DNA of 63,746 bases, filler included, from Octopus bimaculoides (taxonomy: Eukaryota): NCBI RefSeq assembly GCF_001194135.2. It is 6 parts of 6 records of this genome, joined end to end, with 100 filler letters (N's around TTAATTAATTAA, not from the genome) between each part and the next. Parts side by side here need not be neighbours in the genome. Positions count along the whole stretch, not along the records: positions 16,421 to 44,870 come from NC_068991.1; 5 more parts are not named here. One strand, given 5' to 3'. The notes beneath the pieces are model-generated. The model ran no database searches and was not told where the DNA came from. It was given only the letters and a program-made list of their open reading frames with translations. The translations under genes were made by a program, and so were the position numbers. Shown in pieces: positions 35,647 to 35,869 of the stretch. Position 1 is the first letter of the stretch, and each line of letters starts with the position of its first letter.

Positions 35647-35869
35647 ATGGATCCTAAATATCTGCTGAATTTATTCATTTGCATTATAAATTTAATGTCA
35701 ATCGTCCAAACCGAGGCTCGAAGTGTGTGCCGTTATAGCTATGGCTGTTACATTTGCCGAACGGATTCTGCAAAAGGAGGACGGTGTGAAATTTATCGTT
35801 ACTGTTTCAGACAACGGAATCGTTACAACAAAGTGCAATGTCTGAGATACAACCAGCGTTCTACACAAG
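35647..35869 (+). CDS. Protease gene 2, exon 1: signal peptide plus unrecognised Cys6, Arg/Tyr-rich cationic module
   Basis: MDPKYLLNLFICIINLMSIVQTEA (hydrophobic, signal-like) followed by RSVCRYSYGCYICRTDSAKGGRCEIYRYCFRQRNRYNKVQCLRYNQRSTQ. The phase-1 donor G|GTAAGT joins in frame to 38758, giving D-G-C-G. Confidence 0.75.

What the first reader, a model, noticed from the sequence alone, without database searches (positions are those of the whole stretch)
35647..35869. Unrecognised Cys6, Arg/Tyr-rich cationic module fused to an S1 protease
Seen: after a signal-like 24-mer comes a 50-aa segment with 10 Arg, 2 Lys, 2 acidic residues (net about +10), 7 Tyr and 6 Cys spaced C-x5-C-x2-C-x9-C-x5-C-x11-C. 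It is spliced in phase 1 onto the protease. Known: this spacing does not fit clip (ends in CC), LDLa, sushi, EGF, kringle, WAP or ShK domains. The composition recalls disulfide-bonded beta-hairpin antimicrobial peptides such as tachyplesin and gomesin. Inference: this may be a new accessory or pro-domain that targets the enzyme to anionic surfaces, or a bioactive peptide released on activation. It lies N-terminal to the C1-C122 linker Cys and contains several Arg residues where it could be clipped off.
Basis: partly seen in the sequence, partly recalled or inferred. Interest (0 to 1): 0.8.

Follow-up and report, generated by a model that had tools for sequence, protein, structure and literature searches.

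The report
Truncated chitin-binding-type module on octopus protease
The arginine/tyrosine-rich six-cysteine segment is a real, conserved N-terminal part of an Octopus bimaculoides chymotrypsin-like protease; it is most likely a shortened, heavily diverged leftover of a known chitin-binding (peritrophin-A/CBM14) domain rather than a brand-new domain.

Summary
Window 35647-35869 is exon 1 (phase 1) of a six-exon S1 protease gene. The four exons in the window reproduce residues 1-217 of RefSeq XP_014781253.2, 'chymotrypsinogen A [Octopus bimaculoides]'. After a 24-residue signal peptide comes a 50-mer with 10 Arg, 2 Lys, 2 acidic residues, 7 Tyr and 6 Cys, spaced exactly as reported.

The exon, its splice donor, all six Cys and a net charge of +8 to +10 are conserved in O. 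vulgaris and Argonauta hians. No domain library, PDB sequence search, profile comparison or fold search recognises the module.

Context explains it:
- The tandem paralogue 18 kb upstream carries a CBM14 (peritrophin-A) chitin-binding domain in the same exon and phase.
- Gastropod relatives share the rare Asn-P1 activation site (CGI[KR]xxxN|IVGG). They carry a CBM14 domain right after the signal peptide, preceded by a short Cys prefix (C-x5-C-x2/3-C in Patella and Haliotis).
- The octopus spacing C-x5-C-x2-C-x9-C-x5-C-x11-C matches the first six of their eight Cys. The C4-C5 hairpin and C6, which carry the conserved chitin-binding aromatic residue, are missing.

Residue similarity beyond the Cys is nil, so descent is inferred, not proven. 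The module lies N-terminal to the C1-C122 tether, so it should stay attached after activation. This is a new variant of a known kind, of moderate interest.

The parts
35647..35869 (+). Exon 1 of gene B (XP_014781253.2): start codon, signal peptide, Cys6 module; 223 nt, ends in phase 1, GTAAGT donor
   Evidence: identical to P0001 residues 1-74; orthologous exons in O. vulgaris (L002 9857-10079) and Argonauta (L003 18222-18453)
35647..35718 (+). Predicted signal peptide, aa 1-24 (MDPKYLLNLFICIINLMSIVQTEA)
   Evidence: Read directly from the sequence: basic n-region, 16-residue hydrophobic core, T-x-A before the cut. Inference only; SignalP not run.
35719..35868 (+). The 50-residue Cys6 Arg/Tyr-rich module (aa 25-74), net charge +10. 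Proposed to be a truncated CBM14-type domain: two extra N-terminal Cys plus CBM14 C1-C4.
   Evidence: Composition. Conservation. Cys register against Patella, Haliotis and Gigantopelta.
35870..38757 (+). Intron 1 (phase 1); contains SINE-like repeats and no hidden exon encoding the missing CBM14 C-terminal part
   Evidence: the Argonauta intron 1 is only 578 nt and has no candidate exon
38758..38923 (+). Exon 2: linker Cys C77 (38763-38765), activation site N84|I85 (38784-38789), catalytic His (38910-38912)
   Evidence: Pfam Trypsin E 6.5e-33
39578..39674 (+). Exon 3 of gene B
41686..41851 (+). Exon 4 of gene B: catalytic Asp (41722-41724) and Cys195 (41782-41784), the partner of C77 (the C122 equivalent). 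Exons 5 and 6, including the GDSGGP motif, lie beyond the piece (L001 21709-21845 and 23347-23532).
17276..17594 (+). Exon 1 of upstream tandem paralogue gene A: signal peptide plus a CBM14-like module (C-x5-C-x2-C-x16-C-x10-C-x12-C) plus linker; 319 nt, phase 1
   Evidence: Pfam CBM_14 scores 20.8 bits for O. bimaculoides and 25.0 bits (above the 22.1 cut-off) for the Argonauta orthologue. Gapless alignment to the Patella CBM14 domain.
19651..33154 (+). Remaining exons of gene A: 19651-19813, 21877-21973, 23485-23653, 28404-28537, 32990-33154. The model is 348 aa; the activation site is SL|VVGG.
   Evidence: Pfam Trypsin E 9.5e-60

Best explanation
The segment is the non-catalytic N-terminal domain of a secreted chymotrypsin-like zymogen of Octopus bimaculoides.

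Origin. It most likely descends from a CBM14 (peritrophin-A) chitin-binding domain with a short N-terminal Cys prefix. Gastropod relatives and the adjacent paralogue still encode such a domain in the same first exon. In the octopod 'B' lineage the domain was shortened. It keeps the two extra N-terminal Cys and CBM14 Cys 1-4. It has lost the C4-C5 hairpin and C6, the part that carries the conserved chitin-contacting aromatic residue. Every non-Cys position has diverged.

Function. The module has become strongly cationic (+8 to +10) and Tyr-rich, and that state is conserved between Octopus and Argonauta. It sits upstream of Cys77, which pairs with the C122-equivalent Cys195. Activation cleavage after Asn84 should therefore leave it covalently tethered to the active enzyme, as clip domains and the chymotrypsin A chain are.

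Inferred role (not shown): a tethered binding or anchoring module that concentrates the protease on polyanionic or carbohydrate-rich surfaces, with canonical chitin binding probably lost.

Predicted disulfides: C28-C37, C34-C53, C47-C65.

Confidence is about 0.7 for the origin and about 0.4 for the functional part.
For: (1) Real coding exon under constraint. The exon, its donor, all six Cys and the charge are conserved in O. vulgaris and Argonauta. Between Octopus and Argonauta, module dN is 0.27 against a dS of about 2.2 (omega about 0.1).

(2) Same gene architecture. Octopus A, octopus B and Haliotis P0267 all have six exons. Exon 1 holds signal peptide, Cys module and linker, and ends in phase 1 two to four codons before the linker Cys.

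(3) CBM14 in the relatives. Pfam CBM_14 scores 31-35.5 bits (E about 1e-8) in Patella P0191. PF01607 is precomputed for Haliotis P0267. The Argonauta gene A module scores 25.0 bits and the O. bimaculoides gene A module 20.8 bits. The best PDB sequence match of gene A's module is the CBM14 allergen Blo t 12.

(4) Shared rare character. The activation site CGI[KR]xxxN|I[VM]GG with Asn at P1 occurs in 14 of 436 protease domains fetched. All but four of these (three in P0063, one in P0041, both multidomain proteins) are gene B versions or the gastropod CBM14-protease cluster.

(5) Cys register. B is C-x5-C-x2-C-x9(7 in Argonauta)-C-x5-C-x11-C. Patella is C-x5-C-x2-C-x10-C-x5-C-x10-C-x12-C-x9-C, Haliotis x5,x3,x13,x5,x10,x12,x9, and Gigantopelta ..x2,x11,x5,x11,x12,x9. 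That six-Cys pattern occurs in 323 fetched S1 proteins (237,746 residues) only in P0001/P0207, P0191 and P0267, each time starting at residue 24-28. A uniform-placement null gives about 2e-5.

(6) Coherent disulfide logic. CBM14 pairs C1-C3, C2-C6 and C4-C5 (Avr4, PMC6128652). Gene A aligns gaplessly to Patella and has lost exactly C2 and C6, as Der p 23 and CHIT1 have.

(7) Tethering. The 10 non-module Cys fit the five canonical chymotrypsin disulfides, including C77-C195.

(8) The single-sequence AF2 model is all-beta, with hairpins around C28-C37 and C47-C53. This is weak evidence.
Against: - There is no residue-level similarity between the B module and the CBM14 modules. A profile built from Patella, Haliotis and the two gene A modules scores native B no better than shuffled B. 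A loop-by-loop BLOSUM permutation test gives p = 0.5-0.66. hhalign gives a probability of 0.7%.
- Pfam gives no CBM_14 hit even at E<=10.
- MAFFT prefers other registers, for example aligning B 'CRYSY' at C1 with gene A 'CRYSY' at C3, or B 'CFRQRNRY' with Haliotis 'CRQRNYR'. The register is therefore not unique.
- The NJ tree of protease domains is unresolved (about 40-45% identity all round). It places gene A, not gene B, with the gastropod CBM14 proteases.
- AF2 confidence is low: 66 for the module alone and below 50 in the full-length model. Foldseek found nothing.
- Between the two Octopus species the module shows 8 nonsynonymous against 2 synonymous changes (omega about 1, tiny counts).
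- The function is entirely inferred. No expression or binding data were found.
Confidence: 0.55

Rival explanations
1. A genuinely new, unrelated Cys6 fold. The ancestral CBM14 coding sequence in exon 1 was lost or overwritten, and the present 50-mer arose by de novo sequence turnover. On this reading its Cys spacing resembles CBM14 by coincidence.
For: No detectable sequence or profile similarity to CBM14 or to anything else. No fold match. Alternative alignments exist.
Against: The module sits in the same exon, at the same phase and position, directly after the signal peptide. Its mature N-terminus begins with the same C-x5-C-x2-C as the tandem paralogue and Patella. The six-Cys pattern is unique to this group among 323 relatives. 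The C-x5-C pair with an aromatic residue at position 3 (EIYRY / SRYYF / RSFVL / RRYSV) is the CBM14 C2-C3 hallmark.
Confidence: 0.2
2. A bioactive cationic peptide (antimicrobial or toxin-like) that is excised from the zymogen and acts on its own.
For: The net charge of +8 to +10 and the Tyr richness are conserved. The model is all-beta. A CBM14 member, tachycitin, is an antimicrobial chitin-binding peptide (named as a CBM14 structure; its antimicrobial activity is from my own knowledge).
Against: The module is upstream of the tether Cys77, so activation at N84|I85 does not free it. The stretch between C65 and C77 has no conserved dibasic or other processing site: LRYNQRSTQDG, LRYNQHATQDG and LRYRRHSTVQDG. 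At 50 residues with three disulfides it is unlike the 17-18-residue hairpin peptides (their size is from my own knowledge). The gastropod CBM14 domains are also cationic, +4 and +7, so positive charge is partly ancestral.
Confidence: 0.1
3. A derivative of the clip-like C-x6-C-x3-7-C-x10-C-x5-7-CC module, which other lophotrochozoan relatives carry just before the protease domain.
For: Owenia, Argopecten, Lingula, unionid, Crassostrea and Pomacea relatives have such a six-Cys module, and it is also unrecognised by Pfam. The first five spacings are roughly similar. The B protease is 45% identical to Argopecten P0171.
Against: The spacings mismatch (5 against 6, 2 against 3-7) and the defining adjacent CC is split by 11 residues. 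Those relatives mostly have Arg at P1 (Met or Leu in two), never Asn. The tandem paralogue and the Asn-P1 relatives carry CBM14 instead.
Confidence: 0.05
4. A vestigial spacer or pro-region, kept only for folding, secretion or zymogen stability, with no binding function of its own.
For: The domain is truncated and the chitin-binding hairpin is lost. It evolves faster than the protease: dN 0.27 against 0.13, and omega about 1 between the two Octopus species. Patella and Lottia also have models without the CBM14 exon, which suggests the domain is dispensable there.
Against: All six Cys and the high positive charge are retained across the Octopus-Argonauta split, and long-term omega is about 0.1.
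Confidence: 0.1

Closest known systems
CBM14 / peritrophin-A chitin-binding domain (Pfam PF01607) fused to S1 proteases: gastropod 'chymotrypsinogen A-like' proteins (Patella caerulea KAK6176386.1, the Haliotis cracherodii protein P0267) and the octopus tandem paralogue
   Same: Same position (directly after the signal peptide, in exon 1, phase 1) and the same six-exon gene. Same Asn-P1 activation motif in the gastropod proteins. Same spacing of the first six Cys, including the C-x5-C hairpin with an aromatic residue at position 3. Basic and aromatic-rich.
   Different: About 15-25 residues shorter. It lacks CBM14 C5 and C6, the C4-C5 hairpin and the conserved Trp/aromatic residue used for chitin contact. 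There is no HMM or profile similarity. The charge is higher, +10 against +4 to +7.
Insect modular chitin-binding serine proteases (Anopheles Sp22D, Drosophila Tequila, Apis SP23)
   Same: S1 protease carrying chitin-binding domains N-terminal to the catalytic domain. Sp22D binds chitin (PMC1761132).
   Different: Those are large mosaic proteins with many CBM14 copies plus LDLa and SRCR domains. Here there is a single truncated copy, and chitin binding is doubtful.
Arthropod clip domains, and the clip-like C..CC modules of other lophotrochozoan S1 proteases
   Same: A small three-disulfide N-terminal domain expected to stay disulfide-tethered to the protease after activation cleavage. This is a functional analogy; the behaviour of arthropod clip domains is from my own knowledge.
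   Different: The Cys pattern lacks the adjacent CC. There is no CLIP HMM hit. The evolutionary neighbours differ.
Small CBM14 proteins lacking the C2-C6 disulfide (Der p 23, Blo t 12) and tachycitin
   Same: They show that CBM14 tolerates loss of a disulfide and can exist as a minimal beta module. Tachycitin combines the CBM14 fold with antimicrobial activity (own knowledge).
   Different: Those proteins keep the C4-C5 hairpin; the octopus B module does not.
Cationic beta-hairpin antimicrobial peptides (tachyplesin, gomesin)
   Same: Arg/Tyr/Cys-rich composition and predicted beta structure.
   Different: They are 17-18 residues long with two disulfides, free and amidated (own knowledge). This module is 50 residues with three disulfides and is tethered to an enzyme.

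Membership tests
CBM14 / peritrophin-A chitin-binding domain (PF01607) | Significant match to the family HMM | tested here: not met
   No Pfam hit at E<=10 for the O. bimaculoides or Argonauta B module. By contrast: Patella 35.5 bits, Argonauta gene A 25.0 bits, O. bimaculoides gene A 20.8 bits.
CBM14 / peritrophin-A chitin-binding domain (PF01607) | Six Cys spaced C1-x(11-24)-C2-x5-C3-x(9-19)-C4-x(10-14)-C5-x(4-14)-C6, pairing C1-C3, C2-C6, C4-C5 | tested here: not met
   B has spacings compatible with C1-x12-C2-x5-C3-x11-C4 (C34, C47, C53, C65) but no C5 or C6. The pairing is taken from PMC6128652.
CBM14 / peritrophin-A chitin-binding domain (PF01607) | C4-C5 hairpin with a conserved exposed aromatic residue (Trp) used for chitin contact | tested here: not met
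   After C65 the sequence is LRYNQRSTQ, followed by the exon boundary. No hidden exon supplies the hairpin. The role of Trp465 (CHIT1) and Trp100 (Avr4) comes.
CBM14 / peritrophin-A chitin-binding domain (PF01607) | Distorted beta-sandwich fold | tested here: inconclusive
   AF2 single-sequence model: pLDDT 65.9, five short strands. Below 50 in the full-length model. Foldseek against PDB found no match.
CBM14 / peritrophin-A chitin-binding domain (PF01607) | Descent from a CBM14-encoding exon (positional homology) | tested here: met
   Same exon, phase and position as in the tandem paralogue and in Haliotis. The six-Cys register is shared only with CBM14-bearing relatives. This shows descent, not current membership.
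CBM14 / peritrophin-A chitin-binding domain (PF01607) | Binds chitin | not testable with these tools
   Needs a pull-down of recombinant module on chitin beads.
Peptidase S1 (chymotrypsin family) zymogen | Trypsin-fold HMM match, His/Asp/Ser triad, IVGG N-terminus, five canonical disulfides including C1-C122 | tested here: met
   Pfam Trypsin E 6.5e-33 on the window-encoded part. H126 and D175 are in the window; S266 is in L001 exon 6. Cys bookkeeping.
Clip domain (PF12032 and relatives) | Six Cys with adjacent C5-C6 (CC), and a CLIP HMM match | tested here: not met
   The last two Cys are 11 residues apart. No CLIP hit at E<=10.
Beta-hairpin cationic antimicrobial peptides (tachyplesin / gomesin type) | Free peptide of 17-25 residues with two disulfides, released from a precursor at defined processing sites | tested here: not met
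   50 residues and six Cys, lying upstream of the tether Cys77, with no conserved processing site between C65 and C77. Antimicrobial activity itself cannot be tested here.

The most novel reading that the evidence does not exclude
The truncated CBM14 remnant has been re-purposed in octopods into a new kind of polycationic, Tyr-rich disulfide mini-domain. On this reading it has its own activity (binding to microbial or prey polyanionic surfaces, membrane activity, or glycosaminoglycan binding). It would be delivered either tethered to the protease or after secondary clipping. The whole mollusc protease group would be switched on by an Asn-specific (legumain-like) activator rather than by a trypsin-like one.
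Probability: 0.15. Interest if true: 0.6.

Novelty: new variant of a known kind. Interest (0 to 1): 0.35.

Why it matters
Three points would follow if this reading is right.
- It is a clean example of domain decay and re-purposing. A recognisable carbohydrate-binding module shrinks to two-thirds of its length and loses its ligand-binding hairpin. It drifts beyond the reach of HMM and profile methods yet remains under constraint as a cationic appendage of an enzyme.
- It shows that 'orphan' Cys-rich N-termini can sometimes be explained by gene structure, a tandem paralogue and the Cys register when sequence searches fail.
- It defines a mollusc group of CBM14-bearing chymotrypsin-like proteases with an unusual, conserved Asn at the activation site. 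That group is relevant to how cephalopods and gastropods process chitinous food or matrices.

It does not open a major unsolved question, and no function has been shown.

Tried and rejected
- Pfam scan of the module from two species at E<=10: nothing.
- PDB sequence search: only a chance match at E = 3.
- AF2 on the module alone gave pLDDT 66. AF2 on the full-length protein with a 23-sequence alignment gave a module pLDDT below 50. Neither model is usable. Foldseek against PDB gave no match.
- The full HMMER search of 1.84 billion representatives with P0001, and the profile search with A3, were both swamped by multi-domain polyserases. The useful relatives had to be picked out by hand.
- A profile of CBM14-type modules against B, against shuffles, gave no signal. 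A loop-wise BLOSUM permutation test gave no signal. hhalign gave a probability of 0.7%.
- The NJ tree of protease domains was unresolved.
- I suspected a frameshift at the exon 3/4 junction. This was rejected: the true acceptor is 14 nt upstream, at 41686.
- I looked for a hidden exon in intron 1 that could supply the rest of CBM14. None was found.
P0162 is not on record.
- Literature searches on the accession numbers and on octopus salivary proteases found nothing about this gene.
- The P0063 'CGIKGVSSN|IIGG' polyserase was checked and set aside as a different, Ser-less mosaic protein.

Full report
WHAT IS THERE. The piece is Octopus bimaculoides chromosomal DNA. L001 (CM046611.1) matches it exactly, with L001 position 10001 equal to window position 35647. 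Window 35647-35869 is an exon that opens with ATG and ends in phase 1 at a GTAAGT donor. Joined to 38758-38923, 39578-39674 and 41686-41851, it reproduces residues 1-217 of P0001 exactly. P0001 is XP_014781253.2, 'chymotrypsinogen A [Octopus bimaculoides]', 324 aa. The last two exons lie outside the piece, at L001 21709-21845 and 23347-23532.

Residues 25-74 contain 10 Arg, 2 Lys, 1 Asp, 1 Glu, 7 Tyr and 6 Cys, with Cys at 28, 34, 37, 47, 53 and 65. The rest of the protein is a standard S1 protease (Pfam Trypsin, E 6.5e-33). The ten Cys outside the module fit the five canonical chymotrypsin disulfides, and Cys77 is the C1 partner of Cys195, the C122 equivalent. The six module Cys must therefore pair among themselves. 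The module lies upstream of the tether.

IS IT REAL AND CONSTRAINED. An intact orthologous exon 1 exists in O. vulgaris (L002 9857-10079) and in Argonauta hians (L003 18222-18453). Both have the same donor position and all six Cys. In Argonauta one loop is two residues shorter, giving C-x5-C-x2-C-x7-C-x5-C-x11-C. Net charge of the module is +10, +10 and +8 in the three species.

Between Octopus and Argonauta the module has dN 0.27 against a saturated dS of about 2.2, an omega of about 0.1. It evolves about twice as fast as the protease domain (dN 0.13). Between the two Octopus species the counts are too small to interpret: 8 nonsynonymous against 2 synonymous changes. No hidden exon in intron 1 could add further domain sequence, and the Argonauta intron is only 578 nt.

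Direct transcript evidence could not be obtained. The support for splicing is the RefSeq model, the conserved reading frame and donor, and the need of a secreted protease for a signal peptide.

WHAT THE SEARCHES SAY. No known-domain model recognises the module:
- Pfam gives no hit at E<=10 for two species.
- PDB sequences give nothing.
- AF2 gives a low-confidence all-beta model, with pLDDT 66 for the module alone and below 50 in the full-length protein.
- Foldseek finds no match.

CONTEXT THAT EXPLAINS IT.

(a) The tandem paralogue. A paralogue, gene A, starts 18 kb upstream on the same strand (17276-33154, six exons, my 348-aa model). Its exon 1 is 319 nt, also phase 1. It encodes a signal peptide and a module C-x5-C-x2-C-x16-C-x10-C-x12-C. 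That module hits Pfam CBM_14 (chitin-binding peritrophin-A) at 20.8 bits, just under the 22.1 cut-off. Its Argonauta orthologue scores 25.0 bits, above the cut-off. Its best PDB sequence match is the CBM14 allergen Blo t 12. The A-B pair is syntenic in O. vulgaris and Argonauta.

(b) The gastropod relatives. These are the only fetched single-protease relatives that share B's activation motif. They are gastropod 'chymotrypsinogen A-like' proteins that share B's odd activation motif:
- B: CGIRPTRN|IVGG
- Patella and Lottia: CGIKSSLN|IVGG
- Haliotis: CGIKSSPN|IMGG
- Gigantopelta: CGAKISPN|IVGG

Asn at P1 occurs in only 14 of 436 protease domains fetched, and all but four of these (in the multidomain proteins P0063 and P0041) are versions of gene B or this gastropod cluster. 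Patella P0191 and Haliotis P0267 carry a significant CBM_14 domain directly after the signal peptide (31-35.5 bits; PF01607 precomputed). The untruncated Gigantopelta exon shows the same Cys pattern in a translation read from its genomic locus; no HMM search was run on it.

(c) Gene structure. The Haliotis gene has the same six-exon layout. Its exon 1 (signal peptide, CBM14 and linker) is 355 nt, ends in phase 1, and ends four codons before the linker Cys. Exon 1 of B is therefore positionally homologous to a CBM14-encoding exon.

(d) The Cys framework fits. The spacings compare as follows:
- Patella: C-x5-C-x2-C-x10-C-x5-C-x10-C-x12-C-x9-C
- Haliotis: x5, x3, x13, x5, x10, x12, x9
- Gigantopelta: ..x2, x11, x5, x11, x12, x9
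- B: x5, x2, x9, x5, x11, and then it stops

Each time it starts at residue 24-28. Random placement of six Cys in 50 residues would give this pattern with p of about 2e-5.

CBM14 disulfides are C1-C3, C2-C6 and C4-C5 (Avr4 structure paper PMC6128652). Gene A aligns gaplessly with Patella and has lost exactly C2 and C6. That pair is also absent from Der p 23 and CHIT1. B keeps the two extra N-terminal Cys and C1-C4. It lacks C5, C6 and the C4-C5 hairpin, which carries the conserved chitin-contacting aromatic residue (Trp465 in CHIT1, Trp100 in Avr4).

WHAT DOES NOT FIT. Beyond the Cys positions there is no similarity:
- A profile of the four CBM14-type modules aligns B in the predicted register, but it scores B no better than shuffled B.
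- A loop-wise BLOSUM permutation test gives p = 0.5-0.66.
- hhalign gives a probability of 0.7%.
- MAFFT prefers other registers, driven by short R/Y-rich words such as CRYSY and RQRN.
- The protease-domain tree is unresolved, and it groups gene A, not gene B, with the gastropod CBM14 proteases.

Descent from CBM14 is therefore an inference from position, gene structure, the paralogue and the Cys register. B fails the tests for current CBM14 membership. I put the origin at about 0.7.

Other lophotrochozoan relatives carry a different, clip-like C-x6-C-x3-7-C-x10-C-x5-7-CC module, which Pfam also does not recognise. B fits that pattern much worse.

HOW IT PROBABLY WORKS. Shown by sequence: this is a secreted zymogen whose module sits upstream of Cys77, and its activation bond lies after Asn84. 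Inferred: after activation the module stays disulfide-linked to the enzyme, as clip domains and the chymotrypsin A chain do. In the ancestor, and probably still in gene A and the gastropod proteins, a tethered CBM14 would hold the protease on chitinous material. In B the chitin-binding hairpin is gone. What is conserved is a compact three-disulfide core carrying 10-12 basic residues and 6-8 Tyr.

My best guess is that the module is an anchoring domain for polyanionic or carbohydrate-rich surfaces, at about 0.4. A vestigial structural role and secondary release as a cationic peptide are the functional rivals. Release on activation is not supported, because no processing site between C65 and C77 is conserved. 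No literature or expression data on this gene were found.

COMPARISON AND NOVELTY. The architecture 'chitin-binding domain plus S1 protease' is known from insects: Sp22D, Tequila and Apis SP23 (PMC1761132). The octopus B module is a truncated, hyper-cationic variant that no longer qualifies as CBM14 by any test. I rate it a new variant of a known kind. Interest is moderate: it is a tidy case of domain decay beyond detectability, plus an unusual Asn-P1 activation site, but it is neither a new class of domain nor a demonstrated new function.

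Noticed in passing
window 38784-38789 (N84|I85); also L002, L003, and P0162/P0190/P0191/P0267/P0274: The residue before the IVGG activation bond is Asn in gene B of all three octopods (RN|IVGG; GN|IVGG in Argonauta) and in the gastropod CBM14 proteases. The preceding residue varies (R, G, L, P). Asn at P1 was found in only 14 of 436 protease domains fetched. 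This suggests activation by an Asn-specific (legumain-like) enzyme rather than by a trypsin-like one.
   Followed up: partly
window 17276-33154 (+): Tandem paralogue gene A (six exons, 348-aa model). Its N-terminal CBM14-like domain has lost the C2-C6 disulfide pair, and its activation site is SL|VVGG (Leu at P1). The session's protein searches did not return an O. bimaculoides protein with this N-terminus, although a 353-residue product is called at the locus.
   Followed up: partly
P0207, P0208, P0002, P0038; L003 18222-24300: Annotation problems in this gene pair. The older RefSeq version XP_014781253.1 (561 aa) fuses genes A and B. UniProt A0A0L8GGQ7 lacks exon 1 and starts in intron 1 (MYFI..). 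The O. vulgaris model starts at an internal Met inside the module. The Argonauta gene A model lacks the module and two exon parts. The gene B orthologue is not annotated at all in the Argonauta assembly.
   Followed up: yes
P0133, P0171, P0164, P0170, P0165, P0088, P0003: Annelid, bivalve, brachiopod and caenogastropod relatives carry a compact C-x6-C-x3-7-C-x10-C-x5-7-CC module just before the protease domain. It looks clip-like, but Pfam gives it no hit at E<=1.
   Followed up: partly
P0162, P0188, P0189, P0190 compared with P0191: The Patella and Lottia gene has models with and without the CBM14 exon (390 aa against 265-295 aa). This may reflect alternative first exons, which would make the domain optional there.
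   Followed up: no
window 19420-19582, 36023-36101, 37142-37301, 37359-37517, 37802-37916 (inverted copy about 28001-28138); 20008-20154, 21192-21337, 22336-22481 (inverted copy about 32011-32172): Two families of short interspersed repeats (about 150-200 nt, 70-85% alike) populate the introns of both genes. ARAGORN calls no tRNA in the piece.
   Followed up: partly
window 31601-32004, 34100-34677, 40731-41508: Three runs of N (assembly gaps) lie inside the piece. The last one is in intron 3 of gene B. No exon appears to be lost, because the four exons match the RefSeq protein without a break. The long 'inverted repeats' reported by the repeat finder are just these N runs.
   Followed up: yes
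L003 about 18750-18800: Intron 1 of the Argonauta gene B contains a short copy of that gene's own exon 5 end plus donor (..IKGACS|gtgagtattaaacac).
   Followed up: no
P0001 residues 260, 289, 300 (outside the window piece): The inferred S1-pocket residues are Gly189, Gly216 and Ser226 in chymotrypsin numbering. There is no Asp189, so the enzyme is not trypsin-like. Its specificity is probably chymotrypsin- or elastase-like. The numbering was assigned by hand from the Cys191 and Cys220 landmarks.
   Followed up: partly
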